A DNA stretch of 64,000 bases, from sequence record PV764938.1. One strand, written 5' to 3'. Position 1 is the stretch's first letter, and the number at the start of each line of letters is the position of its first letter. Both the position numbers and the translations under genes were made by a program. The notes beneath the pieces were generated by a model. That model was not told the DNA's origin and made no database searches. It saw only the letters and a program-made list of their open reading frames with translations. Positions 1 to 53,165 of this stretch are shown one piece after another.

Positions 1-191
1 TCGGACATGAGTCCGACTTCACCACCATATAGATCAAGTGCGGTGATCAGTTGAAACTCGTTGAGTTCCTTTAGTCGAGTATCCAAGATATCCAAGCGAA
101 TACTCTTGGGATCACCAAGCTGCTCGTTGGTCAGATAGCAGAAGCTGCAACGGAAGTTACAGAAGTACGTGGGGTTCAAGCTTACTTTCAT
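1..191 (-). CDS. Radical SAM protein, N-terminal part (runs off the window edge)
   Basis: Not in the ORF track. Manual translation from ATG at 191: MKVSLNPTYFCNFRCSFCYLTNEQLGDPKSIRLDILDTRLKELNEFQLITALDLYGGEVGLMS. It has a CxxxCxxC motif and a GGE motif, and an ATGA overlap with the upstream stop. Confidence 0.9.
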   Translation of the reverse strand, partial: MKVSLNPTYFCNFRCSFCYLTNEQLGDPKSIRLDILDTRLKELNEFQLITALDLYGGEVGLMS

Positions 192-1273
192 GCGAGTCCA
201 TTGACCTCCAGGATGTCCGTAGCAAGCGTTTTCATCGTCCGGCAGTGCTGGTCTACCAGATTCGCTTCCTTCAAGTCCTTGACTGTTTTACGGCATCCAT
301 TGCAAATTGCAAACATTGGACAGCTATAGCACTCGTGCTTCATGGAATCCAAATTAATATCGTCCTGCAGCGGTGTGAAAAACTCACCCTCGAGGACTTC
401 CTTTTGGAAATCGATTGGCTTGTCACGGTCATCACCGAAAGCACCGCAACTGTAATAGTCGCCACCGGGCTGAAGCGTACGAATACCTTCGTCGCACTTG
501 CGGTTTTGTGGGCAGATTGTCGGATGATCCTTGAGACGTTTGGTCATCTGCTTCGTGTTGAATTCCCAGGGCGTCAATCCGGCTTTGTGAATGTCCACGT
601 AAATCTTGTAGATCTTCGACAAGATATATGGATTGCCGGATTGTCCCATTTTATGTCCGGTGCGTGGATCCACAATGATGTCACCGGAAGCCATCGCATA
701 ATTGAGTTTACACTCGACGCCATGCTTCTGTCCGTCTTCGTCAATATAGGCGGGTTTGCCGTCGGACATTTCGCGAGCCAGCTCAACGTTCTTGATCGCA
801 AGGTGTTCGTTCTCGTCGGTCACCACGCTGATAAAGTCGGGACGATATCCAACATGCTCAAGCATTGCGTTGGAGACTTCCCATAGATCTTGCTCCGTGA
901 ACAGTGACAAGTCGCCCTTGACACGTCCGGGACCGTAATTGAAGCTAGTTGCGACACCCATACGTGGATGTTGAAACAGCTTGGTCCACTTCTTCGGGTT
1001 TTTCAAGAACGGCCACAAATTGCTTGTGAAGCTGATGCTTGCACGATACTCGTGTTTGTCTAGGTGATCGATGAGTTGCCAGTAATACTGGGGCGGAACC
1101 ATCAGAGGATCACCGCCGTTTACGATGATCGTACTCGTATGAGGGAACCGTTTGAGGAACTGATAAATGCGCTCAAGATCCAACGTCTGCGCGGAATGAG
1201 CAGCGATTTTTGTGCTAGAGCAGAACGTGCATTTGAAATTGCAGAGCTCAGTGGGTTTAATAATCAGGTCCAT
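188..1273 (-). CDS. Radical SAM/SPASM-domain protein
   Basis: CNFKCTFC, GGDP motif, C-terminal CPQNRKC..SCG..CYSCPMFAICNGC..HC. Start moved from 1438 to MDLIIKP at 1273 (GAGG upstream; avoids overlap with the neighbour). Confidence 0.92.
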   Translation of the reverse strand: MDLIIKPTELCNFKCTFCSSTKIAAHSAQTLDLERIYQFLKRFPHTSTIIVNGGDPLMVPPQYYWQLIDHLDKHEYRASISFTSNLWPFLKNPKKWTKLFQHPRMGVATSFNYGPGRVKGDLSLFTEQDLWEVSNAMLEHVGYRPDFISVVTDENEHLAIKNVELAREMSDGKPAYIDEDGQKHGVECKLNYAMASGDIIVDPRTGHKMGQSGNPYILSKIYKIYVDIHKAGLTPWEFNTKQMTKRLKDHPTICPQNRKCDEGIRTLQPGGDYYSCGAFGDDRDKPIDFQKEVLEGEFFTPLQDDINLDSMKHECYSCPMFAICNGCRKTVKDLKEANLVDQHCRTMKTLATDILEVNGLA

Positions 1274-1280
1274 TTTCGCC

Positions 1281-2189
1281 TCAGTAGGACTCGTACGTTT
1301 CCAACTTAAACATGCTCTCGATACGCAGGAGGTCATCGTAGCCGGGATAACCGGCTTCACCAATCTTCGTCTTGAGCTTTGCCACTGGGATACGGCCGCA
1401 ACAGGATAACGCATATACGGGATCAAAATCCGGATCAAGGTATTTTAGCGGGCCGATATGATCGTAGAAGTATTGAATAAGCTCGGCTTCAACTCCACCG
1501 AGATCCTGCCCGAAGGGGATCATGAATCCGCTGCCCAGCATAGTCGGAGGACCGAAACGCTTGAGCTTGACAGGCTCATAGGCGTTCTCGACTGCACCGA
1601 ATCGCAAGATATTGTGCCACGGCATATCCGCGTAAGTGAGTTCCGCATACACAGTTCCCGGTACGATATCCATCGTCGTAAACTGTAGCCACGACTCATC
1701 AAACTTGCGAGCAAAGTGCGGATCCGGCACATGGATGATTTGCCCGAAAGATGAGCCCTCGTTGCCGTTGTTGAACTCATTGTCCTGCACGTTATCCAAG
1801 AAGAACATTACGCGCTTGAGTGAGTCCATGATCGCCTTGACTTTATAGGCGCGATCGAGTGTTCCGAGTTTTCCCTCGCTCAGCAGCTTGTTGAGGTCAC
1901 GAAGCAATTTTGTTCCATGAGCCGGTTTCAGTTTACCGAAGGGCAGCTTTTGGAACTCGTGATTGATCTCTGCGAGTTGATTTCGGATCGTAGACCACAG
2001 GGAAACCGCTTGCTCTTTTGTCGAGCAGAATACCGCATCCGTCAGATGTAGCGGGTTATCCGTAGGATTGGCAATCGAATACTCAAGCATATCACGCCAA
2101 GCCACCGCCGGTGGAGTATCCAGGAATTCCCATTGTGCGGAGACCTTGCTGTTGTCTCCAGCATCGAACATCATATTCAAAATGCTCAT
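1281..2189 (-). CDS. Hypothetical protein in the radical SAM operon
   Basis: 302-aa ORF coupled by ATGA to the 116-aa ORF; no family recognised. Confidence 0.8.
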   Translation of the reverse strand: MSILNMMFDAGDNSKVSAQWEFLDTPPAVAWRDMLEYSIANPTDNPLHLTDAVFCSTKEQAVSLWSTIRNQLAEINHEFQKLPFGKLKPAHGTKLLRDLNKLLSEGKLGTLDRAYKVKAIMDSLKRVMFFLDNVQDNEFNNGNEGSSFGQIIHVPDPHFARKFDESWLQFTTMDIVPGTVYAELTYADMPWHNILRFGAVENAYEPVKLKRFGPPTMLGSGFMIPFGQDLGGVEAELIQYFYDHIGPLKYLDPDFDPVYALSCCGRIPVAKLKTKIGEAGYPGYDDLLRIESMFKLETYESY

Positions 2190-2536
2190 CGGAATCTCTC
2201 CTTCAGCTCTCGGATAAATTCCTTCTGGAAATTCTCATGGCCGGAAATATCGACGGCGGCGAAGTTCTTCACCTTGTCTCGATTGTTGAAGACGAAGGGA
2301 ATCATCTTGTCGTCCTGTACGAGCTTCAAGTAGTTCTCGGTTGTGGGAACCAACTGAATCAGGAATGCTTGGTAAAATGGAATGTTCTGTTTCTTGCGGA
2401 TAATCCCAATAACGTGTTCGTCAAAGGATTTGTGGACACCTAGGATGCACCGATCATACGGATACATCACAGTCAGTCCGTATTTGCGAATCTCGCTTGC
2501 ACATGCGTCCAAGTAGCTTGTATCGTCATCGAACAC
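2186..2536 (-). CDS. Hypothetical protein in the radical SAM operon
   Basis: 116-aa ORF overlapping both neighbours on the same strand. Confidence 0.75.
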   Translation of the reverse strand: MFDDDTSYLDACASEIRKYGLTVMYPYDRCILGVHKSFDEHVIGIIRKKQNIPFYQAFLIQLVPTTENYLKLVQDDKMIPFVFNNRDKVKNFAAVDISGHENFQKEFIRELKERFR

Positions 2537-3623
2537 TTTTCACCTCGCTGATCTTCCGGTGGACGTCCTTCATCCAACAATCGTTCATTGTTCGATTGGG
2601 GCCATTGAAATGCTGTTGCAGGAAACATCCGAGACCGCAGCGGCTAAAATATTCGCAACTCAGGCAATCCATCTTTGTGATGAACTCGCCTTCCATTTCG
2701 CCTGCCGTCTTCGGAGCAACTTCCTTCTGAAAATTATTTAAGAGAATCGTGCAACGACCAGCTTTACCATCGGGCATAATCGTGTAGGTGCTCTGACAGC
2801 TCATCGCATTGGTTTCGTTCAGCATCCATCCGGTGATCGGATGCACAAGCGGATAATTGTCGGTCAAGAACACATACATGTCACGGAGTTCATGATCCTT
2901 CGGGCTCATAAGCTCGTGATTGGCTTCCGGTGTATAATAGTCGAAATACACTTCGAAGTGTTCGTAGATATAGTCGAAATGCGGAATATTGCGGGATAGA
3001 AACTTACGAATGTTCGGCGCAGTCAACACGACGTTGACCACGCTGATGTAGTCCTTGTAGATCTCCAAGTTCTTCGCAAAAATGATCAAGTCCTTTGCGG
3101 AGAAACGCATGGATGGATCGTAGCTGGTGCCCAAAGTGGTCTTTGCACCAGTCGCATTAAGCGTGTCGATGAGCGACTTTACCGCTTGCGTGTTGAAGTG
3201 AACCAGGTTGCTAACAAATACAAACTCAACGGGATACCCCATCATATCGCAGAAATCACGGACGTCAAGAACCAACATGAGGTAGTCCACATATTGCTTC
3301 TCGGTGAATCGATCTTGGAATACTTCTCCACCCATGAAGTGAATTGAGAAGGTCTCTTTGCGCATTTTCTTCAGCAATTGGATCGCTTTGATAACATCCT
3401 GGGCTTTGCCACGGATATTATCGATGCCGACTTCGGAGTCGTGATCCTGATTGCAGAACTTACAGGACAAATTGCAATGCTCGAATAGGGTGACAATGAT
3501 TTCGCCCTGTGTGCTGCGCTTTTTGCTCAGCAGGGTGTCAGTCATTTCAACGATAGGTTTAACCGAGGGATCGATGTCATTGATACTAATGACATCGTCA
3601 CCACCGAATACGAGCTTTTCCAT
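2526..3623 (-). CDS. Radical SAM/SPASM-domain protein
   Basis: CNLSCKFC, GGE, C-terminal CQSTYTIMPDGKAGRC..CLSCEYFSRCGLGC..DC. Start moved to MEKLVF at 3623 (GGA upstream). Confidence 0.92.
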   Translation of the reverse strand: MEKLVFGGDDVISINDIDPSVKPIVEMTDTLLSKKRSTQGEIIVTLFEHCNLSCKFCNQDHDSEVGIDNIRGKAQDVIKAIQLLKKMRKETFSIHFMGGEVFQDRFTEKQYVDYLMLVLDVRDFCDMMGYPVEFVFVSNLVHFNTQAVKSLIDTLNATGAKTTLGTSYDPSMRFSAKDLIIFAKNLEIYKDYISVVNVVLTAPNIRKFLSRNIPHFDYIYEHFEVYFDYYTPEANHELMSPKDHELRDMYVFLTDNYPLVHPITGWMLNETNAMSCQSTYTIMPDGKAGRCTILLNNFQKEVAPKTAGEMEGEFITKMDCLSCEYFSRCGLGCFLQQHFNGPNRTMNDCWMKDVHRKISEVKSVR

Positions 3624-3624
3624 T

Positions 3625-4404
3625 TTATTCCTGGAACTGTTGGGCTTCGTAACGAGCTGCCTGTTCAAGCATCGCAATTGGGTCGTACTCTGCGGTACCC
3701 ATCGCGTCGAAGATCATCGGCAGCGGGTTCGTTTCCTTCATGAAGTGGAAGAACAGATTCTGTCCACCGAACATGTAATCCTCGAACTGCTTTGTGAAGT
3801 AGAAGAATCGCTGACCCGGAACACTGAAGAACAATTCCATGAACTGTGGAATATCAAACAGTTGCACGAAGTTATTGCCGACAACATGCTCATCGTCAAT
3901 GTTCTCGTACTGTTCCTTTGCGTTACCGAAAGCATCAGTGAAGCCCTGGCTTGCCTTCATCGTGTAAACGATCATGGAGTCCATAAAGATAACCCACTTG
4001 GAGACCATAATCTGGTTGTCCATGATGAACTCAATGATTTCCTCTGCATCGAGAATTGGGTTCTCGATGTTGTGATAGAAGTCATTGATGTCTTTAGCGG
4101 CCGTGAGAATAGAACCCACAGTGAGAGCCAAACTAGGGCAACCCAGAAGATTGCGGAAGCTCATGTACTCGGCGATCAGATCGAAACGTTCCTGTTTTGG
4201 AATGTCACGGCTGACTTTGAGATCGCATGGGATTTCCAAGTTGCTCAGATATACGAGCAACTGTTTTCCCTTCAACGCGCTTGTCTCATAGTCCACGATG
4301 AACGCGAGTGCTTCATCGGAGAAACTCTTCTGCAGATTCTCCATGCTGATCGGAGCAGGAGTTTCAATAAGCTGAGCTGGAGTTTTGTTAGACAAATCAA
4401 ACAT
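3625..4404 (-). CDS. Hypothetical protein in the radical SAM operon
   Basis: 259-aa ORF with AGGA RBS, between the CHxS-tail protein and a radical SAM gene. Confidence 0.85.
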   Translation of the reverse strand: MFDLSNKTPAQLIETPAPISMENLQKSFSDEALAFIVDYETSALKGKQLLVYLSNLEIPCDLKVSRDIPKQERFDLIAEYMSFRNLLGCPSLALTVGSILTAAKDINDFYHNIENPILDAEEIIEFIMDNQIMVSKWVIFMDSMIVYTMKASQGFTDAFGNAKEQYENIDDEHVVGNNFVQLFDIPQFMELFFSVPGQRFFYFTKQFEDYMFGGQNLFFHFMKETNPLPMIFDAMGTAEYDPIAMLEQAARYEAQQFQE

Positions 4405-4413
4405 GTAGGTTCC

Positions 4414-5334
4414 TTATCGACGGCTACGGCTGCTATGACACGAAGCGTGGCACGATGTGTGGCAATAATCCAAGATAATAGACGCCGTGTAGTTCTTGGA
4501 GTCAAGCCAAATGTTCTTCATACGTTCGAAAACTGTGATCAGAGTATCCGCTGCAATGACAGCACCCTTCGGGTCAGGACCACCGCCCTGGCCACCGGAG
4601 TCAATACGAGGACCACGAATCGGGTCACCTGTAATCGTCCACGAAACCGTGATATAGTCGAGTGCGCTTCGGAATGGTTCCGCAAAGTGCGTGATGCCCG
4701 ACTTCGAACCCTGCTGGGAGAATGTATACCACTGCTCGACAGTTACGAGCGTGTCACCCTTTACGGGGATTTCAACACCATCGAATGTATGCGGATACGT
4801 CTTGCTGTTGTAGTCGCGATCCGTAATTGCCATACGCTCAGTGATCGTTCCCTTACGGATCTTGGAAATAGCAGATGTGTGCATGGCAATGGCGTGTGCA
4901 ACCGAGCTCTGAATACTTGCTGCTTCTGTTCCGGGAACACCAACACCGGTACCACCATTTGTGTCCCAGAAGCTTCGCTGACCATCAACACGGTCGCCGG
5001 AGTTCTGTGGAACTTGACCGTCATCGGGAAGGTCTGACTTTGGTCCGCCTAGAACGTCAGTGAGAACAATCTTTGCGCCGCCCTTCTTGAAATAGTGCGG
5101 AACATTGTTGACGGGAATCACTTCCGAGAAACCCTGCGGAGACGGATTCTGCGAGTCCGCAATACCCAAACGGTAAACGGTCTTCAGCGGATCCGCTGCA
5201 TTGTCCTTGTGGAATTGGATAGCCGCTTCGACTTTACGGACGAACTCCAAACGGAACTTTCCGAGAATGTCGTCGTATGCGGTAGGAGAGGTTTCCTTCG
5301 CATAAACTACTGAACCTTTTGTAGGATTCGCCAT
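4414..5334 (-). CDS. Protein with C-terminal (CHxS)3-RSRR tail; candidate radical SAM substrate
   Basis: 306 aa ending YCHTSCHASCHSSRSRR; start overlaps the stop of the upstream radical SAM gene (TAATG). Substrate role is inferred. Confidence 0.8.
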   Translation of the reverse strand: MANPTKGSVVYAKETSPTAYDDILGKFRLEFVRKVEAAIQFHKDNAADPLKTVYRLGIADSQNPSPQGFSEVIPVNNVPHYFKKGGAKIVLTDVLGGPKSDLPDDGQVPQNSGDRVDGQRSFWDTNGGTGVGVPGTEAASIQSSVAHAIAMHTSAISKIRKGTITERMAITDRDYNSKTYPHTFDGVEIPVKGDTLVTVEQWYTFSQQGSKSGITHFAEPFRSALDYITVSWTITGDPIRGPRIDSGGQGGGPDPKGAVIAADTLITVFERMKNIWLDSKNYTASIILDYCHTSCHASCHSSRSRR

Positions 5335-6404
5335 TAATCTCTCTCCTGTAGAAATTTGTCAAACAGATCGTAATCGTTCACTGTTTTCAAATGTTTAATT
5401 AGGCTTTTCGGGCTTGCACACACATTGCCCTGCCAGAGCATCTGCTGACAATCGCCATTGCAGATATCAAATACTGGGCAACTATAGCAGGCCGGGTTTC
5501 TGAAACTTTCACAAGCAATCTTCTTCATACGACCAGGGTTGTAGAAGAGATCCTTGATCTCCATTGACAGCGTACCGTAGTTATTTACTGGAGCATCGTT
5601 CGGGCAACCACCAATGGAACCATCGGGATTCAGTGTGAACATTTTGGTTTCACAATTCCTGCAGAATACGCCACCGGTATAGCCGCGATTGAACTTTTCC
5701 AGGAGACCGTTCATGAACACATTCATTGGTGCCCATTCCCAAGCCTTATGCTCAACTGATTGTTCCCACATACGCAGGAACCATGCGTCCATTTCAATAT
5801 TGCTGGGGAAGATGCTGTCGTTGCCAATAGCATTCCCGTGCGGGGTGAGTCGTTCCAAGCTGATGTAGCGGACACCCAGATCAGCCGCCATACGAAGCAG
5901 CTCGATGGGTTCCTTTTGGATCGTATTCCGAGACAAGCTCACCATCAGCGTTACATCGAAACCCTCATCTACGAGAGTCTTGACGTTCTTGCGCCATAGT
6001 TCTTCTTGCTTCTCGTTCTCGAAACGAATGCCATCATCCCAAGACGTGGCAATAGTGTTGCTGAATGCTTCCTTCATGAAGCTCAGCTTTTCTTCGTCCA
6101 AGTTATAGGTCAGGTTCGTGCAAGCGGAAAACCGCATGTTCGGGAACAGATCCTTTGTGGCTTCCCAGACCTTGCGCATATGGCTAACTGGAGCCAAGAA
6201 CGGCTCACCACCGTGGAACTCTACAGTGACATGTTGGAGCAAGGGCTGTGCTTGCTTCAAACGTTTGAACCAATCGATTGTATGAGTCGGGTTGAAGTAA
6301 ATCTTACGACCCAAACGACCACTCGTGAAACAATGATCGCAATTGAGCTGGCACGTTTCCGTAGTCTTCAGGTATATGTGGAGTTGCTTGAGCATGTTAT
6401 CCAA
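5334..6404 (-). CDS. Radical SAM/SPASM-domain protein
   Basis: CQLNCDHC, HGGEP, C-terminal CRNCETKMFTLNPDGSIGGC..CYSCPVFDICNGDC..VC. Confidence 0.93.
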   Translation of the reverse strand: MDNMLKQLHIYLKTTETCQLNCDHCFTSGRLGRKIYFNPTHTIDWFKRLKQAQPLLQHVTVEFHGGEPFLAPVSHMRKVWEATKDLFPNMRFSACTNLTYNLDEEKLSFMKEAFSNTIATSWDDGIRFENEKQEELWRKNVKTLVDEGFDVTLMVSLSRNTIQKEPIELLRMAADLGVRYISLERLTPHGNAIGNDSIFPSNIEMDAWFLRMWEQSVEHKAWEWAPMNVFMNGLLEKFNRGYTGGVFCRNCETKMFTLNPDGSIGGCPNDAPVNNYGTLSMEIKDLFYNPGRMKKIACESFRNPACYSCPVFDICNGDCQQMLWQGNVCASPKSLIKHLKTVNDYDLFDKFLQERD

Positions 6405-7014
6405 TCAGTGAGGGCTGATCTGCCCACAGCATTTGAGTCTTGACACGTGGCTTGATCGAGCCAGTACCGAAACTGATCATTACGGAATCTTCGACGTTGG
6501 TTGCACAATGTTTCAAACCCTCGGGCATGAACAGCCAATCGCCATCTTCTAGTGTGTAGGTTCCGGATTCAGTCTCCATCGTTTTGGTGCCGGAGACCAT
6601 GTAACACATGACATGACCTTCATCCTTGTGCCATCCAAAAGAACCTTGATTTTCAAAGCCAATGAATAGGTGACCGTTTACGGTCTTACCAACGCCGGCT
6701 TCAAGATCCGCTACAAGATCCACAAGCTCCTGGTTGTATGTTTCCATGTCCTCAACCTTAATTGGCCAGCCATGGTATTGGGCGATTCCCAGCATATCGA
6801 ACTTGTTTTTGATGCCTGGGAAGTCAGCGATGCAATCGGTTTGCCAGAAGGTTCCATCCGAAAACAGCTTGATGATATAGGTTTCACCACTCTCGAGAGT
6901 TGCCATGTTCGAGGCAATTGCAAGCGGGTTCTCCGGGAGATTCAGCTCGACCGGGTGATGAAAGTGGAATGCTTCAAACTTCTCGAAGCGTTCGAACTCA
7001 AATGGAAGTGCCAT
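6397..7014 (-). CDS. JmjC/cupin-like Fe(II)/2OG oxygenase
   Basis: GSFGWHKDE (HxD), GTKT, LEDGDWLFMPEGLKHCA (distal His), typical of the cupin_4/JmjC double-stranded beta-helix. Confidence 0.8.
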   Translation of the reverse strand: MALPFEFERFEKFEAFHFHHPVELNLPENPLAIASNMATLESGETYIIKLFSDGTFWQTDCIADFPGIKNKFDMLGIAQYHGWPIKVEDMETYNQELVDLVADLEAGVGKTVNGHLFIGFENQGSFGWHKDEGHVMCYMVSGTKTMETESGTYTLEDGDWLFMPEGLKHCATNVEDSVMISFGTGSIKPRVKTQMLWADQPSLIG

Positions 7015-7131: not shown

Positions 7132-9012
7132 TTACTTGGAGCCCACAACGCACAATACGGTGCCTTCTTCGTCGGTTAGCTTATCAGCGAGTGCGCGACC
7201 AACAATCAAATGTGCGGAAACTGTTGCCAGTTCTGCATCATCCAACGCAATCGCAACGCCTGGAATGTCCGAGAGAACCAAACGCTGACCCTTACGGATT
7301 TTACCGATCAAACGAACCGGAACACGTCCCGAAAGCGCAACCGGTGGGTGAGTGTGGTCAGGACCCGCACCCGAGTTAAGCAGGAAGCCTGGCTGTGTCG
7401 AAACAACACCAAAGTAGTTGATATCGTCGGCACCACTTGTCTGTGTGACTTCCTTCTCACCACCGAGGCTTACAAGAGTTCCCTTCGGATAGAGATGGTC
7501 GGATTCGTAACGTTCCGCCAAGTCAGCGTATCGTGTCTTAGTTGCTTCACCATCAAAGACGTTAGCGTAGATTGTGCCCCAACGCTGACCCGCGTTACCC
7601 ATGTCGTGCTGGCCAGTTGGAACCGACGACTTATCAAGTGGAACAAACGAACCCTGTGGAAGTTGGCTAACAACGTCGCCTGTTACTTCTTCAGCGATTG
7701 CCTTGACTGCGTCCTTACCCTGCTGGGTGAGCATCGCAGTACCAACGTAATCGTTTGCTTCTGTTGCAAATAGATCCGTGAAGATGATTTCAACGTCGCT
7801 GGTTGCGGCTTCAGTCTTCAGAGACTTAGCTGCGTCGAACATCTTGGCCTTTTCTGCTGTGTCACAGAGTTCAGCCTTCTTGGCCATACCAAATACGTTG
7901 ACTTCGGAAATGTCTGCTTCACCATCTGGATCAGAGTCACCAGCGTAGACATACTTGGAGAAGAAACGCAACCAGTGCTGTGCCTTCGAACCAAGATCCA
8001 ACACGATGTCTTCTACGATTGGGGCAGTGTCAACGTCTGAGCGCAAGAACTGCGAAGAGTTCAAACCATTGAGACGTTCTGCGTCCGATACCTGGCCGTT
8101 AAAGATCATTGCAGCATCGTGGTTCTGGTTAACACCAGGCTGCAAGGTCAAGCTCGTAGCGTCGGGATCGTATGGGTCAGCCCATGCACCGAAGTCCATT
8201 CCCTTGATCTTGTTCTCTTTCAGCTTGACAATCTGCGGAACCCAAACCGATACAATCTTACCATCGAGGACGACCATGAACATGTCGATTTCGATTTCTT
8301 CGCCAGTCGTCGGGTCAATAACAGTTTCCTTAGTAGTTTCAGTCCATGAACCACCATTAGGATCATTTGGATCTTGGAGACCCTGCGGCCCAATAAGAAC
8401 CCAACCATTCGGAACAATAGAACCATCAACGCGCTTTACCTTCGGAGGGAACGATGACAACGATTTCAGCGAGGAGTCGAATGCCCACAGTTTACGTTCA
8501 GGAAGCATCCACCAAAGATCACCTTCACTTGGGTTCGGCGGAGGAGGAACAATTTCGTCATCAGGAAGTTCTGCAGGATCTGTACCACCAGGAACACCCG
8601 TGTAGGGACCACCGACCTTCTTCCACTGGTAACCATCCCAGTAGTAGATTGTGCTGTCTTCGATGTTATACCACAGGTCACCCGGCTCTGGGTTTTCCGG
8701 TGGGTTTACAGAGCTCTGCGCACCACCAACGTTAATCCAAGTTGTACCATCGAACACCTTCAGCTTATTGACAACCGAAGGAGGCGGGCCCGGATCGAAA
8801 GTGTGGAACCATGTCTGACCCTGTAGTGGGTTAGCCGGTGGAGTTGGACTCGAAAAGGATTCCAACATGTGAACGAAGTTCTCAGCAACAGACTCACCGT
8901 AATCGACAGTACCGCGACCAAGCAGAGTCAAGCTTGTGGTTTCAGAATCTCTTGTAAAGTCCTGGACATTAGTGAGCAATGTCCCGTCTGTACGATTAAT
9001 TGAATATGGCAT
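7132..9012 (-). CDS. Tail fibre/baseplate-attached protein with C-terminal peptidase G2-like chaperone domain
   Basis: Three PxNPxxGxxW motifs and Pro-rich linkers; C-terminal YADLAERY..VVSTQPGFLLN..VALSGRVPV motif. Confidence 0.7.
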   Translation of the reverse strand: MPYSINRTDGTLLTNVQDFTRDSETTSLTLLGRGTVDYGESVAENFVHMLESFSSPTPPANPLQGQTWFHTFDPGPPPSVVNKLKVFDGTTWINVGGAQSSVNPPENPEPGDLWYNIEDSTIYYWDGYQWKKVGGPYTGVPGGTDPAELPDDEIVPPPPNPSEGDLWWMLPERKLWAFDSSLKSLSSFPPKVKRVDGSIVPNGWVLIGPQGLQDPNDPNGGSWTETTKETVIDPTTGEEIEIDMFMVVLDGKIVSVWVPQIVKLKENKIKGMDFGAWADPYDPDATSLTLQPGVNQNHDAAMIFNGQVSDAERLNGLNSSQFLRSDVDTAPIVEDIVLDLGSKAQHWLRFFSKYVYAGDSDPDGEADISEVNVFGMAKKAELCDTAEKAKMFDAAKSLKTEAATSDVEIIFTDLFATEANDYVGTAMLTQQGKDAVKAIAEEVTGDVVSQLPQGSFVPLDKSSVPTGQHDMGNAGQRWGTIYANVFDGEATKTRYADLAERYESDHLYPKGTLVSLGGEKEVTQTSGADDINYFGVVSTQPGFLLNSGAGPDHTHPPVALSGRVPVRLIGKIRKGQRLVLSDIPGVAIALDDAELATVSAHLIVGRALADKLTDEEGTVLCVVGSK

Positions 9013-27683: not shown

Positions 27684-28331
27684 GTGGATACAGAAACATA
27701 TAACAGGCTACTAATGGTACAAAAGAAACAAAAACAAGAACTCTATGTAAGTACGGATATTGAAGCAAACGGTCGGGTCCCAGGACTCTCTTCCATGCTT
27801 AGCTTTGCAAGCGCAGTATTCGACATTGACAAAAATCTCCTCGGAACATTTTCGCGCAATTTGGAATTGCTACCGGGCTCCAATCCGCATCCGGAAACAG
27901 ATGCATTTTGGAATGAATCCGAAGCAAACAAAGCCGCATACTTGGTAACCCGTGTTGACATGGTAAGCCCAGCCGATGCAATGCGTGATTACGTCGCATT
28001 CCTCAAGGATCTCCCAGGTACTCCAATTTTCGTTGGTTATCCTGCGGCTTTCGATTTCAAGTGGATCGACTATTACGCTCATGCGTTTGTCGGCGATAAT
28101 CCCTTCGGTTTCTCCCGTTGCATTGACGTTAAGTCCTATGCTTACGCGGTCCTGAAGAAGGAAAAGTTCTCCCACACTGCAAAGCGCAACATGCCAAAGA
28201 ATTGGTTCGACAATCTCCCGCACACTCACATCGCACTAGACGATGCAATTGAGCAGGGCGCAATGTGGATCAATTTGCTCCGAGAAACTACTGGTCTGCC
28301 GCGTCTTGCGGATTTGACGTTGGCTGCATAA
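27684..28331 (+). CDS. DEDDh 3'-5' exonuclease (Rv2179c/RNase T-like)
   Basis: STDIEANG (ExoI), AAFDF (ExoII), HIALDDA (ExoIII). Start may instead be the ATG at 27714. Confidence 0.85.
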   Translation: MDTETYNRLLMVQKKQKQELYVSTDIEANGRVPGLSSMLSFASAVFDIDKNLLGTFSRNLELLPGSNPHPETDAFWNESEANKAAYLVTRVDMVSPADAMRDYVAFLKDLPGTPIFVGYPAAFDFKWIDYYAHAFVGDNPFGFSRCIDVKSYAYAVLKKEKFSHTAKRNMPKNWFDNLPHTHIALDDAIEQGAMWINLLRETTGLPRLADLTLAA

Positions 28332-28340
28332 ATCGTGCAT

Positions 28341-28369
28341 AAAAACGATGGGCCCGTTTAGGGCCCATC
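28341..28369. terminator. Terminator between convergent genes
   Basis: GATGGGCCC-GTTTA-GGGCCCATC, 9-bp stem, with an A5 run on the left (U-tail on the minus strand). Confidence 0.8.
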
Positions 28370-28372
28370 CTC

Positions 28373-28576
28373 TTATCCAAAATACCCACCAACTACTATA
28401 TCATCCTCATTGATGCTTGGGAAGTACCGGCGTTCATCCCGGAAGAACACTGCACTCACTGTTTCCTTTGGCTTCACCACGTAAACTCCAAACTTGGACA
28501 TTTCGTGAGCAAAAACTCCGATTGTGAGCTTCCTTTTGAGAAGCTCATCAACCTGTGCCTGCTTTAGACTCTTCAT
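28373..28576 (-). CDS. Small hypothetical protein
   Basis: 67 aa, GGAG RBS, directly after the spike gene. Confidence 0.65.
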   Translation of the reverse strand: MKSLKQAQVDELLKRKLTIGVFAHEMSKFGVYVVKPKETVSAVFFRDERRYFPSINEDDIVVGGYFG

Positions 28577-28586
28577 GCGTATCTCC

Positions 28587-31500
28587 TTAAACTGGAACGT
28601 AACGAGCGGTTACACTTCCGGATTCACTCGCTGCATTCAAGCCAATCAAACCACCATTTGCGTCCAACACTGGTCCACCCGCCATACCAGGCTTCAAACC
28701 ATTGACGTCATTTGTCGCCATACCGTTTAGACCATAAACTGTCAGACCACCGGCTGGAGTTCCAGGACCCGTATACTTGACCGTCTTGTTGTTCTCACCC
28801 GTTGGATTCGCAGGCATCGAAATCAAAGTTTCTCCAAATGCGTAACCGTAGCTCTGCATTGGAACACCGTCCGATTGTAGGCCTGCCATGTTGATTGGTA
28901 CCAAGTCAGCGTAATCGTAATTGCGGATTCTGATATGTGCGATGTCCTTGGATGGGTTCATCGCAATCAGCTCTGCAATTCGCATACGACCACCAATTTC
29001 CACATAAACGATTTGTCCGATTGTGGCAGTGTCGATACCAATGACCTGTGCGTTTGTCATCAGCGTTCCTGAGAAGTTAATGACTACGCCAGTACCCACG
29101 TTGTTACCGGAGATGACTTTACCGATACTCAAACGACCCGAAGGCGGCACCGGAACGATTGTTCCGTTTTCTTCACCCTCTTCTAGCTCGGATGGCTTGT
29201 TTGGATTCTTGATTTGATCCAAAAGCTGTTCAAGCTGCTTTAGAGGTGTCTTCGGTGTCTTTCCATCCACTGTTTTTCCGTTGGTTGTCGGGAACGTTGG
29301 GAATATCTCAGCAAGGTTGTCGATGAGGTCTTCCTTCGATTGTTTTCCTTCACGCCACTTTTCGATGCCGGCCTTGACTAGCAAATAGTTGGCAATCTTG
29401 TCCTGCAGGCTTGCTGTGAATTTCTGAGTACCCGAAAGTCCCAAAGCATCACGCGCTTCCTGTAGATCAGGCTGGCTGATATTATAGCGACCAACACCAG
29501 TTTCACCACTTGGGTTAGACGGCGAAGCCTTCATTTGTTCCTGTAGCTGATCGATTTGATCCAACGTCATATTGGTCAGGTTCTTATCGCCACCACTGTT
29601 GGCTCCCTTACCAGCTGTTTCGTTGTAACCGTCACCGGCATCAGTTCCTTCGCTTTGTGCGACCTTGTCAAGGAGCGGGTTGTTTGCGGAATTGTTTCCG
29701 TTGGTTGTGTTAGGATTACCGGAGCCAGAGCCTCCACCCGAACCACCACCTGATCCGCCAGAACCTCCTCCTGATCCACCACCAGCGCCGCCAGAACCAC
29801 CACCGGCTCCGCCGCCTCCGCCACCAGATCCACCTCCACCTCCGCCAGAGCCGGAACCACCTCCGCCCCCACCAGATCCACCGCCGGATCCTCCACCAGA
29901 TCCACCGCCACCTCCTCCGGAACCACCGCCTCCAGATCCGCCAGAGCCTCCGCCCCCGCCTCCTCCAGATCCGCCGCCTCCGCCACCAGAACCGCCGCCA
30001 GATCCCCCTCCGGATCCACCACCGCCTCCACCACCTGAGCCTCCGCCGGCACCGCCGCCTCCGCCTCCACCGGAACCACCACCAGCGCCACCAGATCCTC
30101 CGCCACCGCCTCCGGCTCCTCCACCAGAGCCCGAGCCAGAACCGGAACCACCGCCTCCGCCGCCTCCGCCGCCTCCGCCGCCTCCGCCGCCTCCGCCGCC
30201 TCCGCCACCACCTCCTCCTCCGGAGGAGTTGTCGTCGTCGTCATCGGTTGGATCGTCAACGTTATCTTCAGGCGGCGTTTCTTCGTCGTCCTTCGGAGAG
30301 CCATCGCTATTTGTGTCTTCGTCTTCTTCACCGCCACCAGAGCAATCGGCAGCTTCATACTCTTCATCACCACAAACGAATTCGTGACCCTTAAATGGCT
30401 CATGTGTTGGCAAACGAGTTACAACAGAATCACGAGTAGTTTCAGGATAGCACTCGGTTAGTTCACGGTCCGGAAGTACGCAAGGATCCTTAATCTCTGC
30501 TTCTGCTGGAGGTTCTGGTTCATTTGGAGTATCCGAGCAATTCTGCATGATCTTTTCGGACTTCATCAGGATCAATTGACCCGAAGTCATCGTAAAGACC
30601 TTGTCGGAATTCACTGTTAGGTTACCACCGACTTGAAGAGAATCCGCACCCTCGATAAGAACAGAACGGTTCTTCTTGATTGTGCTGTGATATGCACCAC
30701 CAATGTCCAACTTGTGGTCCTTATTGGTGATTTGATCCCAGTTGCCAGCGGTTCCCCACTTGGTGTCACCTTCTACGAACGCATTGAAGTTACCACCGAC
30801 ATGCAAATTGAAATCTTTGTCCGAGTGCATGTTGATGCCATTCGCAGCGTGAACGTTGAATGTTTTAGCCGTATACATGTCGATGGCATCATCTGAGATT
30901 TGCACCCAGGAGTTGCCCTTCTTGGTGTTCATGTAGATGTAACCGCAAGTCTCGTGAATGAGAACCTGCACGCCACTCTTGGTACGGAAACGGATGAATT
31001 CATTTTCCTGATTATCGTCCGCATAAATTTGCGAACCGTCAGGAGTTAGGAAACCATAGACGTGACTCGGTGACTCACGACGTGCGCCAGCAGTTGTGGT
31101 ACCGCGCTGAGTGTCCGTGTAAAGTCCCTGCATTGTGAGACCTTCATGAAGAGGATCATAACGGGGACGAGTCGGATCCAAGTTGTTTCCGATTTCAGAG
31201 AATTTGTTGTATTCGCCGACTGGCGGTTCTTCTGCACCACACGAAGCTTCGTCAAAGGATTCACTAACAGGAATACCAGGAACCATGTGGTTCATGTATT
31301 GCTTATACATGGAACCAACCCAGATACCCTTGTTGGGGTCACCGTTGATGAACATGACGATGACTTCGTTATCGATATCCGGCGGAACAGCCCACCAACC
31401 ATAGGAGACTTGGGATTCCGTGTACTTTTTGCCGTCCTTGATGTTACCCTTCTTCCACAGGTTGTCCTGGTTGTTCGGGTATTCTTTGATCGGTGTAGCA

Positions 31501-43233: not shown

Positions 43234-43758
43234 TTATGCAACGCCCTTTGCTCCGAGTTCAATAAGTTTTTCCTTGTTGGCCAGCACAAAGCTCTCATAA
43301 TCGGTTACGATGTAAGCGCGATCATCAGTCTTCTGATAATGCACGTAGGACTTCAAAACGAATTTGTCCTTGAGCTTTTCGTCAAATGCAACCCAGGAAC
43401 CCTTGCGAGTAATCTTAAAAATTGTGAGGCTCAAATCACCGGGCTCCGCAGGTGTCTCGGTCTGATCGATCCAATCGTTGAGCTGTTTGCAGCAACCATC
43501 GATGATCTGATGGAACGCGATGTCCTTGTAGTTCTTGGCTTCCAGGTTCATCTTCGGGAGGTTCTCAGGCGCAATAATATCGCCCTTCACCATGCGCACC
43601 TGACCAGAGTCTAAGAGGACTTTTCGCTGGACGTTTTTGCCACCGACATAGGCGCCAGAGTTCGGGACACGCATCCAGTGGCCACCCAAGTGTTCACCCA
43701 AAAATTTGCAGATTGCGAGTTCCCAGCTATTGCCCTTCGCCTTTGCTTTGCTTGTCAT
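43234..43758 (-). CDS. Holliday junction resolvase (Hjc-like PD-(D/E)XK)
   Basis: KAKAKGNSWE..RVPNSGA..GDII..LEAKNY; TAAATA at 43793-43798 upstream. Confidence 0.85.
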   Translation of the reverse strand: MTSKAKAKGNSWELAICKFLGEHLGGHWMRVPNSGAYVGGKNVQRKVLLDSGQVRMVKGDIIAPENLPKMNLEAKNYKDIAFHQIIDGCCKQLNDWIDQTETPAEPGDLSLTIFKITRKGSWVAFDEKLKDKFVLKSYVHYQKTDDRAYIVTDYESFVLANKEKLIELGAKGVA

Positions 43759-43849
43759 ATTTTCGATTCCATAAATAGATTAAAGTTTTAGATATTTATG
43801 TACCGCTTTTATATTGCGTTGGATTCCTATTTTCTGTTATGTTCTGGTT

Positions 43850-44640
43850 GTTGCACAATTGCATCCAACAGGCTCCATAAGACTCTCCAGAGACCTCTCC
43901 CCATATACTCCAAATTGAATCCCCTCGAATGAGGGCTTGCCCGCAAATAAAACGCAAATAGGGGTGAACTCCCGGGCATTACCACTTAGGACTGATGGAG
44001 CGGTCCTATTTGTCGGCACTAGATGTCGACATTCTCCTGTTGCTGCGAAACGTACAATCATGCAACTTGAGAATGGGAATCTAAGCTTGTCCCCGAGGAA
44101 TGGGATCAGTTTAGTGAAACGGAGAGAAGCCGTTTGTGTCTAGTGCTATCATGACTAAGTGATAGCGAACCCATCTCGAAGCCGCTGGTATGAGCAAGGA
44201 GATGGGGTTAATTGTTGGAGTAACGAACCAACGACCGTCCTGATAAATTTTCAAATTCATTTGCTAATTTAGGAGCCGCGGGTAGTCGCAGTAATGCGCA
44301 GGGGATCAAGTCAGACCTAGCCCCCTTACACCCGTGCATGCCAGTCCATGTGCTTTATTTTGCCTTATTCCCCGCAACCGGGGGAGTCCGTACCTTGAAC
44401 AGAAAGGACCCAAAGGTCTTTAAGTAATCACTGCTTTAGGACTTCGTCCTAAAGAGGTGTCTGCGTTCACTTCGCTATTCGCTCTTTCACTTGACACCAG
44501 GGGATTGAACTAATTGGGGTTTGGGAAATTAAAAGCTTCGCTATTCCGCTAAAAGCTGTACCACTTATATGTGGGTCATGAGTTTACGAATGAACACGCA
44601 TATAAGTGGTACTGGTGTATATCCTCGGATATACCCATGC
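43850..44640 (+). ncRNA. Candidate large structured RNA (or replication origin)
   Basis: No credible ORF; more than a dozen stems read by eye; promoter-like elements upstream. Boundaries and strand are uncertain. Confidence 0.45.
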
Positions 44641-44708
44641 TTCAAAAGAATTTCCATAACCGTGAACACAAAAAATTCTACTTTAACAAATAAATGGAAT
44701 GTTCTGAC

Positions 44709-44737
44709 TTGATTCCATTGATGTTTTCTGTTATATA
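44709..44737 (+). promoter_or_regulatory. Sigma70-like promoter of RNase H
   Basis: TTGATT-17-TATATA. Confidence 0.55.
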
Positions 44738-44772
44738 AAAGAGAAAATAAAAACGACCTGGAGTTTCAATCC

Positions 44773-45159
44773 ATGAGCAAAATTCAAATATACTTCGACG
44801 GAGGTTGCAAACCAAACCCCGGTAACATGGAAATCTGTATCGTTATCGTAGGCGATGGTGCTCCTCAGCCCAAGACAGTATTCGATCTTGGTCATGGAAC
44901 CAACAATATTGCGGAATGGTCAGCACTGCTTTGGGCTGCTTCCACTGCAAAGGAACGCGGCTACAAAGACGTTGAGTTCCTCGGTGACAACATCACGGTT
45001 ATCAATCAGGCCGACAATAAATGGAAGATCAAAGAGCGTAGCTTCTTGCCGTTCAAGGAAGAGTTCATGCGTTTGAATCATGAGATCGGCGGCAAGCTGA
45101 CTCATACACCACGCGCAACTAATCGTGCTGGAACTTATTTGGAGTCTGGCATCGTTTAA
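44773..45159 (+). CDS. rnhA: Ribonuclease HI
   Basis: YFDGGCKPNPG, TNNIAEW, LGDN, NRA: the D-E-D catalytic motifs of RNase HI. Confidence 0.88.
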   Translation: MSKIQIYFDGGCKPNPGNMEICIVIVGDGAPQPKTVFDLGHGTNNIAEWSALLWAASTAKERGYKDVEFLGDNITVINQADNKWKIKERSFLPFKEEFMRLNHEIGGKLTHTPRATNRAGTYLESGIV

Positions 45160-51934: not shown

Positions 51935-52041
51935 TTCCTCATGCCGCGTCGCCCCCTGCTTATAGCACGCCTATATAGGCGTTATCAAACCGAAAAAGCA
52001 CACTTTTTGACATATATGGGCATTCTTTTTTTACGTCTGGC

Positions 52042-52047
52042 TAAATA
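52042..52047 (+). promoter_or_regulatory. Late promoter (TAAATA)
   Basis: Upstream of the first acidic core protein. Confidence 0.65.
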
Positions 52048-52103
52048 AAGCGTGAACATTAACCATAAACAAATGTTCTCGTTTATCGAGGAAGGAGTAT
52101 CAC

Positions 52104-53099: not shown

Positions 53100-53119
53100 T
53101 TTGGATAAATTAAAGTGAG

Positions 53120-53144
53120 AGGGGAGCATTCGTCTCCCCTTTTT
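53120..53144 (+). terminator. Intrinsic terminator
   Basis: AGGGGAG-CATTCGT-CTCCCCT-TTTT. Confidence 0.75.
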
Positions 53145-53165
53145 CTTTAAGAGGAAGGATTAACA

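What the first reader, a model, noticed from the sequence alone, without database searches (positions are those of the whole stretch)
1..7014. Phage-encoded RiPP-like protein-modification operon: four or more radical SAM enzymes, a JmjC oxygenase and a full-size protein carrying a core-peptide-like tail
Seen: nine tightly coupled minus-strand genes. Three complete CxxxCxxC enzymes have SPASM-like Cys clusters, a fourth is cut by the window edge, and a JmjC/cupin comes first. A 306-aa protein starts inside the stop of one radical SAM gene and ends in CHTSCHASCHSSRSRR. Established: radical SAM/SPASM enzymes are the maturases of sacti-, ranthi- and triceptide RiPPs and sit next to Cys- or aromatic-patterned precursors. 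Inference: this is a virus-encoded post-translational modification system whose substrate is the tail of a folded protein rather than a short peptide. Products could be a cross-linked virion component, a metal-binding cap or a released peptide. I know of no characterised phage system of this kind. The operon continues beyond the left edge.
Basis: partly seen in the sequence, partly recalled or inferred. Interest (0 to 1): 0.9.

Follow-up and report, generated by a model that had tools for sequence, protein, structure and literature searches.

The report
Phage virion protein with radical-SAM-modified tail
A giant Sinorhizobium phage packs four radical-SAM enzymes, an iron oxygenase and helper genes around a virion protein with an invariant 16-residue Cys-His-Ser tail that they most likely modify; the same unstudied gene set recurs in over a hundred uncultured phages and in predatory bacteria.

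Summary
The window is Sinorhizobium jumbo phage Phosso. Ten genes sit with gaps of 9 nt or less: a JmjC-like cupin, four radical-SAM enzymes (three with SPASM-type Cys clusters), a 306-aa protein ending in three Cys-His-x-Ser repeats plus Arg-x-Arg-Arg, and four unknowns. Two of the ten genes run past or lie beyond the left edge.

A DNA pattern for the tail found 114 viral loci. In all 140 ORFs the motif is the exact C-terminus. 109 loci have a radical-SAM gene in the flanks and in 95 it abuts the tail gene.

The core set (cupin, rSAM-A to D, two unknown families) is shared by unrelated jumbo phages of Agrobacterium, Ralstonia, Burkholderia and Pseudomonas. It also occurs on Bdellovibrionota contigs, one of 1.29 Mb. 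A fibre gene with an intramolecular-chaperone domain lies next to it in most viral loci and in both cellular loci examined.

Published proteomics show the Atu_ph07 orthologue is a virion protein that runs at the top of a non-reducing SDS gel.

The enzymes resemble anSME-type protein or peptide maturases but fail every curated family cut-off. The chemistry is unknown and no modification has been observed. I found no paper on it. Best reading: a new radical-SAM system that modifies a fibre-associated structural protein.

The parts
6397..7014 (-). Cupin / JmjC-like Fe(II)-2OG oxygenase, 205 aa, first gene of the cassette
   Evidence: Pfam Cupin_2 scores 33.9 bits against a cut-off of 27.2, and JmjC_2 scores 22.1 against 22. 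H129-x-D131...H169 and K144 are invariant in 16 diverse orthologues. A profile of these hits generic cupins and the MINA53 histidyl hydroxylase 2xdv (E 1e-5, the longest matched stretch). The gene lies directly upstream of rSAM-A in 51 of 54 loci.
5334..6395 (-). rSAM-A, radical SAM/SPASM enzyme, 353 aa, directly upstream of the tail protein
   Evidence: CxxxCxxC at 15/19/22 and eight conserved C-terminal Cys. The SPASM model TIGR04085 scores 26.4 bits against a cut-off of 27. Its profile matches anSME 4k37 over the full length, E 2.5e-9. It is 81% identical to Atu_ph07 gp171 and 38-44% to the RSL2 and DT01 orthologues.
4414..5334 (-). Tail protein, 306 aa: globular N-domain plus C-terminal 16-residue tail; orthologue of the Atu_ph07 virion protein gp170
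   Evidence: 20 homologues, all with the tail. AF2 model: pLDDT 82.6, pTM 0.80, tail residues 295-306 disordered. No PDB fold match. Among viral models it matches Atu gp170 and short 173- and 178-aa proteins, which I take to be tail proteins from their size and did not check. gp170 is detected in virions with 8 peptides and 35% coverage.
4417..4464 (-). The tail itself: three Cys-His-x-Ser repeats followed by Arg-x-Arg-Arg and the stop codon
   Evidence: Among 123 distinct viral tails, Cys, His and Arg are fixed by the search pattern. Positions 4 and 8 are Ser in 123/123 although the pattern also allowed Thr, Cys, Trp and Arg. Unconstrained position 12 is Ser in 117/123 and position 14 is Gly in 112/123. 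Both Ser codon families and both Arg codon families are used. The motif is always the exact C-terminus, 140 of 140.
3625..4404 (-). p20767 family protein, 259 aa (phrog_20767), unknown function, conserved partner
   Evidence: Present in every lineage and usually directly after the tail gene. 441 clusters among 1.84 billion representatives. No Pfam, PDB-sequence or PDB-fold match. The Atu_ph07 orthologue gp169 is not in the virion list.
2526..3623 (-). rSAM-B, radical SAM/SPASM enzyme, 365 aa
   Evidence: CxxxCxxC at 50/54/57 and seven conserved C-terminal Cys. Orthologues in Atu_ph07, RSL2 and DT01. Only weak NCBIfam hits to peptide maturases.
2186..2536 (-). 116-aa protein, lineage-specific, unknown function
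   Evidence: No family hit. No BLAST match to Atu_ph07 gp167, which occupies the same position.
1281..2189 (-). 302-aa protein, unknown function, restricted to the Phosso/Atu_ph07 lineage and L167
   Evidence: 28% identity to Atu gp166. A relative sits in the reduced cassette of L167. No relation to the 370-aa family found elsewhere (hhalign below 50%).
188..1273 (-). rSAM-C, radical SAM/SPASM-like enzyme, 361 aa, the best-conserved enzyme of the set
   Evidence: 52-57% identity to its RSL2 and DT01 orthologues and 55-75% across the 19-sequence alignment A4. CxxxCxxC at 11/15/18 and conserved C-terminal Cys. Its profile matches anSME over the full length, E 3e-7.
1..191 (-). rSAM-D, N-terminal 63 codons; the full 306-aa gene and a coupled 141-aa gene (p141) lie beyond the left edge
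   Evidence: CxxxCxxC at 11/15/18 and four C-terminal Cys, twitch-like. 49% identity to the RSL2 and DT01 orthologues. p141 is conserved in RSL2 and DT01.
7132..9012 (-). Fibre-like virion protein, 626 aa, the usual upstream neighbour of the cassette
   Evidence: PHROG tail-fibre families. It belongs to a family found upstream of the cupin or tail gene in 67 viral loci, whose members hit the Peptidase_G2 intramolecular-chaperone domain. Residues 479-624 align to that region. The Atu_ph07 orthologue gp176 is a virion protein.

Best explanation
This is a conserved protein-maturation module. A fibre- or baseplate-associated virion protein carries an exposed, invariant C-terminal tail: three Cys-His-x-Ser repeats ending in Arg-x-Arg-Arg. 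Co-encoded enzymes modify this tail after translation. The enzymes are four orthogroups of anSME-like radical-SAM enzymes (A to D) and a JmjC-type Fe/2OG oxygenase. In other lineages there are also further 2OG oxygenases, a B12 radical-SAM methyltransferase and up to about ten radical-SAM genes.

Shown: the gene set, its linkage, the invariance of the tail, and virion incorporation of one orthologue.

Inferred: that the tail is the substrate, and the chemistry. The candidates are H-abstraction at C-beta of Cys or Ser (oxidation or thioether formation), a His-to-C-beta cyclophane on the His-x-Ser units, and hydroxylation of His or Arg by the cupin. The product would be a rigid, cross-linked or oxidised cap on a structural protein, not a released peptide. 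rSAM-A, rSAM-C and p20767 look like the minimal core.
For: Linkage: 109 of 114 viral tail loci have a radical-SAM gene, and it abuts the tail gene in 95. The same orthogroups occur in four unrelated isolate lineages and in cellular contigs.

The tail is the only part of the protein conserved between lineages. N-domains fall into at least four classes with hhalign probability of 34% or less. Codon usage shows that selection acts on the protein. The enzymes are far better conserved than the protein they flank: 81% against 42% identity.

The tail is predicted to be disordered and accessible and holds the protein's only Cys residues.

The enzymes start at the radical-SAM core with no leader-binding domain and match anSME, a maturase of full-size proteins. 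The cupin has the HxD...H plus Lys signature and matches a protein histidyl hydroxylase.

His-x-x units are known substrates of radical-SAM cyclophane synthases (PMC11499958).

Atu_ph07 gp170 (31.9 kDa) is in the virion and is most abundant in the top gel band. Only one other protein under 40 kDa with at least 2 peptides, out of 131, does this. None of the enzymes or gp169 is listed.

Two independent variants without the terminal Arg-x-Arg-Arg both lack the cupin, against 51 of 54 standard loci that have it.
Against: No mass shift or cross-link has been observed. Every enzyme scores far below the curated cut-off of every characterised maturase family, so the chemistry cannot be read from homology. 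The gel buffer in the proteomics paper lists no reducing agent, so the high-mass form could be ordinary disulfides between unmodified tails. Cys/His-rich tails can simply bind metal. No recognition element or protease was identified, and p20767, p141 and the 370-aa family have no known fold or family. The number of enzymes, up to about ten, exceeds what a 16-residue tail obviously needs.
Confidence: 0.65

Rival explanations
1. The tail is an unmodified metal-binding or disulfide-forming end (Zn, Fe or Cu held by Cys and His, perhaps across a trimer). It stabilises or anchors a fibre component. The neighbouring radical-SAM enzymes act on something else.
For: Three Cys and three His in 12 residues. 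The tail is placed next to a fibre gene. The gel was run without a listed reductant, so disulfide ladders would explain bands 1-9. From my own knowledge, phage fibres and spikes often hold metal ions through His.
Against: Metal binding does not explain the near-invariant Ser at positions 4, 8 and 12, the fixed Arg-x-Arg-Arg end, or the exact C-terminal position in 140 of 140 ORFs. It does not explain why the enzymes travel with the tail through unrelated phages and into bacterial genomes while the N-domain is replaced.
Confidence: 0.15
2. The enzymes modify another substrate, such as the adjacent fibre protein, another virion protein or a small molecule. The tail protein is a partner, for example a docking or carrier protein, rather than the target.
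For: The fibre gene is a frequent neighbour. Up to about ten radical-SAM genes seem too many for 16 residues. Three conserved unknown proteins could have roles in another pathway.
Against: The fibre family is far less conserved than the tail, and the cellular S74 fibres show no BLAST match to the phage one. Gene order pairs a radical-SAM gene with the tail gene in 95 loci. A reduced cassette keeps only rSAM-A, the tail protein, p20767, one unknown and rSAM-C.
Confidence: 0.1
3. It is a true RiPP or cofactor pathway. The N-domain serves as a large leader, and the modified 16-residue end is cut off and released as a peptide or redox cofactor.
For: The C-terminal core position and the repeated motif resemble RiPP precursors. 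From my own knowledge, mycofactocin and PQQ are built on peptide ends by radical-SAM enzymes.
Against: No protease is recognisable in any version of the cassette. The protein is a virion component. The host domains are 125-310 aa and folded. The genes lie inside the baseplate and fibre module.
Confidence: 0.07

Closest known systems
Anaerobic sulfatase-maturating enzyme (anSME) acting on sulfatases
   Same: Radical SAM plus SPASM architecture with no leader-binding domain. It acts on Cys or Ser C-beta of a full-size protein. It is the best solved-structure relative of rSAM-A and rSAM-C, matched over the full length.
   Different: Scores are 32-43 bits against a cut-off of 349. The target motif differs. 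From my own knowledge, the sulfatase motif has Pro or Ala two residues after the Cys/Ser and Arg four residues after. Only the last repeat of the tail has the Arg, and its middle residue is Ala in 5 of 123 tails and never Pro. Here there are four to ten enzymes per substrate, not one.
Triceptide (three-residue cyclophane) synthases acting on His-containing motifs (HaaB, HtkB, YhhB)
   Same: These radical-SAM enzymes cross-link His C2 to C-beta of the residue two positions on, and their precursors carry 2-3 such units (PMC11499958). The tail has three His-x-Ser units, occasionally His-x-Asn.
   Different: The YhhB, FxsB, GrrM and XyeB models score 21-29 bits against cut-offs of 310-450. The substrate is a folded virion protein. 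A Cys precedes each unit.
His-Xaa-Ser system (HxsA-D; described by Haft and Basu, as cited in PMC9062424)
   Same: His-x-Ser repeats at a protein C-terminus paired with more than one radical-SAM enzyme. That system is itself uncharacterised.
   Different: HxsB scores 36.7 against 370 and HxsC 26 against 267.9. The tail protein has no NCBIfam hit at all, and no protein of the cassette returned an HxsD-family hit. Invariant Cys residues interleave the repeats.
Ranthipeptide, sactipeptide and CXXX-repeat maturases (PapB, CteB, TIGR04115) and QhpD/QhpC
   Same: SPASM enzymes that make thioethers from Cys in repeated short motifs. From my own knowledge, QhpD modifies a protein subunit. PapB is the top NCBIfam hit of rSAM-A.
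   Different: All scores are 17-45 bits against cut-offs of 340-453. No acidic acceptor residue is conserved in the tail.
JmjC ribosomal oxygenases (MINA53, and from my own knowledge NO66 and YcfD)
   Same: A cupin with the HxD...H triad and a Lys. A profile match to MINA53, a protein histidyl hydroxylase. The tail offers invariant His and Arg.
   Different: Only 160-205 aa, with no dimerisation or winged-helix domains. The match is weak (E 1e-5) and generic cupins score higher.

Membership tests
Radical SAM superfamily | CxxxCxxC cluster motif and a Radical_SAM domain hit | tested here: met
   The motif is present and invariant in A, B, C and D. PF04055 scores 30.6 (A) and 29.6 (C) against a cut-off of 29.5. 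B (22.9) and the D fragment (27.2) fall below it.
SPASM/twitch subfamily | C-terminal Cys-rich domain for auxiliary Fe-S clusters (TIGR04085) | tested here: inconclusive
   A, B and C each have 7-8 conserved C-terminal Cys including a Cx2Cx5Cx3C-type block. TIGR04085 scores 26.4 (A) and 21.3 (C) against a cut-off of 27, with no hit for B. D has only 4 Cys, twitch-like.
His-Xaa-Ser system (HxsABCD) | HxsB and HxsC maturases above the curated cut-offs, plus an HxsA-type repeat protein and HxsD | tested here: not met
   HxsB scores 36.7 against 370 and HxsC 26 against 267.9. The tail protein has no NCBIfam hit, and no protein of the cassette hit an HxsD model.
CXXX-repeat peptide system | TIGR04115 maturase above its cut-off | tested here: not met
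   21.4 bits against 350.
Ranthipeptide (PapB) and darobactin/dynobactin maturases | Equivalog model above its cut-off | tested here: not met
   PapB 45.1 against 340, DynA 44 against 450, DarE 35.9 against 650.
anSME | TIGR03942 above its cut-off, and a sulfatase-type target motif | tested here: not met
   32.4 and 43.1 bits against 349. Only the last repeat resembles the motif, and it does not carry Pro/Ala as a rule. A fold-level relation is supported.
Triceptide synthases (3-CyFE) | Family model above its cut-off, and an aromatic-x-x target unit | tested here: not met
   Models score 21-29 bits against 310-450. The target unit, His-x-Ser three times, is present. The cross-link cannot be tested with these tools.
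JmjC / Fe(II)-2OG cupin oxygenases | Double-stranded beta-helix with an HxD/E...H iron triad and a 2OG-binding basic residue | tested here: met
   H129, D131, H169 and K144 are invariant. Cupin_2 is above its cut-off and JmjC_2 is at its cut-off. Profile match to MINA53. Activity was not tested.
RiPP (strict sense) | Short precursor with a leader, a recognition element in the enzymes, and proteolytic release of the core | tested here: not met
   The substrate is 125-310 aa, and the Phosso representative is predicted to fold. The enzymes lack N-terminal extensions. No protease was found.
Virion structural protein | Detected in purified particles | tested here: met
   Shown for the Atu_ph07 orthologue only: gp170, 8 peptides, 35% coverage (PMC6102473 Table S5). 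Not tested for Phosso.

The most novel reading that the evidence does not exclude
Large phages and predatory Bdellovibrionota share a dedicated enzyme kit of 4-10 radical-SAM enzymes plus Fe/2OG oxygenases. The kit builds a multiply cross-linked or oxidised cap from three Cys-His-x-Ser repeats on the end of a fibre-associated protein. The cap would serve host or prey surface recognition, or covalent anchoring of the fibre. This would be the first radical-SAM-made modification of a virion protein, a new class of protein modification, and a link between phage adsorption and prey attachment by predatory bacteria.
Probability: 0.4. Interest if true: 0.9.

Novelty: new variant of a known kind. Interest (0 to 1): 0.82.

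Why it matters
Radical-SAM/SPASM maturases are known from small peptides and a few enzymes such as sulfatases and amine dehydrogenase. As far as I know, and in the papers I could search, they have not been reported on virus particles.

Here an unstudied system with an extremely conserved 16-residue target is linked to fibre genes in hundreds of uncultured phage lineages (441 clusters of one marker protein) and in predatory bacteria.

It offers new enzyme chemistry on a defined, short and invariant substrate. It may also add a new principle of virion or adhesin construction. Cultured phages that carry it already exist (Phosso, Atu_ph07, the RSL2 group, DT01), and one published proteome already hints at a covalent high-mass form.

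Tried and rejected
1. Nucleotide or cofactor radical-SAM families (QueE, MoaA, activases). Only weak N-terminal core hits; full-length matches go to SPASM maturases. Rejected.

2. Membership in the Hxs, CXXX-repeat, ranthipeptide, triceptide or anSME families. All are far below their cut-offs.

3. Fold assignment of the tail protein's N-domain and of p20767. Confident AF2 models (pLDDT 82.6 and 77.5) gave no PDB match. Profile searches of p20767 and p141 against PDB sequences found nothing usable.

4. Promoter and terminator scan: fewer sites than chance.

5. The tail motif without the terminal Arg. This gave mostly chance repeats and only two system-linked variants.

6. Homology between the Phosso 302-aa gene and the widespread 370-aa family: not supported.

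7. Search for cultured phages with the two-tail type 2 architecture: none.

8. Literature: no paper combines jumbo phage, radical SAM and RiPP; Bdellovibrio, radical SAM and fibre; or radical SAM with virion proteins.

9. The link between the cupin and the Arg-x-Arg-Arg end rests on two variants only, and one of them also lacks rSAM-B, rSAM-D and p141. I keep it as a lead, not a result.

Full report
IDENTITY AND OBSERVATION

The first 9 kb of the window are 100% identical to positions 186001-195000 of Sinorhizobium phage Phosso (PV764938.1, 469 kb), so window base 1 is record base 186001. The fourth radical-SAM gene starts at base 191, overlapping the stop of the third. The record shows that it is 306 aa and is followed by one more overlapping gene of 141 aa, before a convergent gene ends the unit.

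Gaps between the ten genes run from -20 to +9 nt. Upstream on the same strand lie a fibre-like gene (7132-9012), a 199-aa gene, a 4555-aa virion protein and two baseplate wedge genes. Consensus promoter and terminator scans are below chance, so co-transcription is inferred from spacing only.

THE ENZYMES

Pfam and NCBIfam confirm radical-SAM domains. The hits are weak and go almost entirely to SPASM peptide and protein maturases: PapB, DynA, DarE, HxsB, anSME and the cyclophane synthases. All are 10-20 fold below the curated cut-offs.

All four enzymes hit one phage family, phrog_1802, yet they form four distinct orthogroups. Alignments with metagenomic orthologues show invariant CxxxCxxC motifs at the extreme N-terminus. 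They also show 7-8 conserved C-terminal Cys in A, B and C, and four in D. Profiles of A and C match anSME over the full length.

The cupin has an invariant HxD...H triad plus a Lys. Beyond generic cupins, it matches the histidyl hydroxylase MINA53.

THE TAIL PROTEIN

The 306-aa protein has no family hit apart from a weak PHROG match confined to its last 47 residues. Twenty homologues, mostly on contigs of 200-490 kb, keep the tail unchanged down to 29% identity.

AF2 gives a confident globular alpha/beta domain with a disordered tail. It has no PDB fold relative. Among viral models it matches Atu_ph07 gp170 and two short proteins of 173 and 178 aa. The three tail Cys are its only Cys.

THE SAME CASSETTE ELSEWHERE

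Agrobacterium phage Atu_ph07 has the same gene order. The tail protein is 42% identical, while rSAM-A is 81% and rSAM-C 75% identical. The RefSeq start of its fourth radical-SAM gene is set too far downstream; the gene is intact.

Ralstonia and Burkholderia phages of the RSL2 group and Pseudomonas phage pPa_SNUABM_DT01 carry the cupin, rSAM-A and then a 178-186-aa protein. That protein has no BLAST-detectable similarity in its N-domain but the same tail. The p20767 protein, rSAM-B, C, D and p141 follow, with extra radical-SAM genes and 2OG oxygenases. Only 15 of 50,697 phage records hold the system, and all are 222 kb or longer.

CENSUS BY THE TAIL

114 loci have an ORF ending in the motif. 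In all 140 ORFs (123 distinct sequences) the motif is the exact C-terminus. 109 loci contain a radical-SAM ORF and in 95 it abuts the tail gene. The five loci without one have cut flanks.

Two architectures appear:
- Type 1, as in Phosso.
- Type 2, with two tandem 125-140-aa tail genes followed by a further radical-SAM family in four to six copies. Up to nine radical-SAM ORFs occur per locus, and the A, C, D, cupin and p141 genes lie nearby. No cultured phage has type 2.

By column, Cys, His and the three Arg were fixed by the pattern. Ser at positions 4 and 8 is 123/123 although the pattern also allowed Thr, Cys, Trp and Arg. Free position 12 is Ser in 117/123 and free position 14 is Gly in 112/123. 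Homology searches add rare Asn at positions 4 or 8. Both Ser and both Arg codon families are used, so selection acts on the protein.

Dropping the Arg requirement gave 41 loci. Only two are system-linked variants and the rest are chance repeats. N-domains fall into at least four classes that share only about 50-60 residues before the tail.

FURTHER CONSERVED NEIGHBOURS

- A fibre-like family with a Peptidase_G2 intramolecular-chaperone domain lies upstream in 67 loci. The Phosso 626-aa gene belongs to it.
- A 370-aa unknown family (59 loci).
- 2OG oxygenases.
- A KedN5-like B12 radical-SAM methyltransferase (13 loci).
- p20767 counts 441 clusters among 1.84 billion representatives. Its AF2 model has no PDB relative.

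CELLULAR GENOMES

The same pattern hit 40 genome contigs. By my count 27 are real system loci, and 16 of those are in MAGs labelled Bdellovibrionota.

On a 1.29-Mb Halobacteriovoraceae contig the full core sits between a serine dehydratase gene and a ParA-like gene. A Peptidase_S74 fibre-like gene is present, and no other recognisable virion gene lies within 10 kb on either side. A 234-kb scaffold looks alike. MAG labels can be wrong, but a 1.29-Mb contig is not a phage.

PROTEOMICS

Attai et al. 2018 (PMC6102473, Table S5) list gp170 (31.89 kDa; numbering checked) among the virion proteins, with 8 unique peptides and 35% coverage. It was found in gel bands 1-9 and was most abundant in band 1, the top. 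Other proteins of about 30 kDa peak in bands 7-8, and a 137-kDa protein peaks in band 2.

The enzymes, gp169, gp166 and gp167 are not listed, whereas the fibre-like gp176 and gp177 are. The sample buffer lists no reducing agent and was heated at 95 °C. The high-mass form is therefore heat- and SDS-stable, but it may be held by disulfides.

INTERPRETATION

The tail is the constant element and the N-domains are interchangeable. The enzymes travel with the tail and are better conserved than the protein they flank. The enzyme architecture is that of protein maturases without leader-binding domains. The protein ends up in the particle and the enzymes do not. These points together make the tail the most likely substrate (confidence 0.65).

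The chemistry is open. anSME-like C-beta oxidation or thioether formation at Cys or Ser, a His-to-C-beta cyclophane on the His-x-Ser units (precedent in PMC11499958) and hydroxylation by the cupin are all compatible.

A lead on the cupin: two independent variants whose repeats are not followed by the terminal Arg-x-Arg-Arg lack it, whereas 51 of 54 standard loci have it. One of the two variants also lacks rSAM-B, D and p141. That leaves rSAM-A, rSAM-C and p20767 as the minimal core.

KNOWN OR NEW

No curated family model is met (see the membership table). Full-text searches found no paper on this system. Genome papers only list the genes as accessory. I rate it a new variant of a known kind, namely radical-SAM/SPASM maturation of a repeat-bearing C-terminus. 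What is unprecedented is the substrate class and the number of enzymes.

SLIP NOTE

The sulfatase motif is described here in words only and is marked as my own knowledge.

Noticed in passing
window 43758-44773: About 1 kb with no annotated gene lies between the divergent Holliday-junction resolvase and RNase HI genes. It has no ORF over 74 aa, no tRNA and no Rfam hit. A 19-nt hairpin sits at 44558-44612. It may be a regulatory or origin region.
   Followed up: partly
L001 7871-8788 (record 179870-180787, about 5 kb left of the window): A lone fifth radical-SAM gene (gp272, 305 aa) is a paralogue of rSAM-B at 35% identity. It lies apart from the cassette, among small genes on the opposite strand.
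   Followed up: partly
L002 14104-15012 (Atu_ph07 gp164): The RefSeq annotation gives 237 aa, but the full-length rSAM-D reading frame is intact and begins right after gp165. Atu_ph07 therefore also has four radical-SAM genes in the cassette.
   Followed up: yes
L062 and L077 (IMG/VR contig 3300025138_000014, 151 kb): One uncultured phage contig carries both a type 1 locus (single tail gene after rSAM-A) and a type 2 locus (two tandem small tail genes).
   Followed up: no
P0067, P0082, P0086 and seven others: About ten of the best 150 p20767-family proteins carry N-terminal extensions of about 100-335 aa of unknown nature, with no tail motif.
   Followed up: partly
L148 (Dysosmobacter segnis strain BX15, 4.3-kb contig) and L166 (archaeal MAG): System loci appear in an isolate assembly of a Firmicute and in a MAG labelled Methanobacteriota. 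These are probably phage or mis-binned contigs.
   Followed up: no
window 28000-30000 and 52000-54000: Strong local GC-skew excursions of -0.18 and +0.17. Not examined.
   Followed up: no
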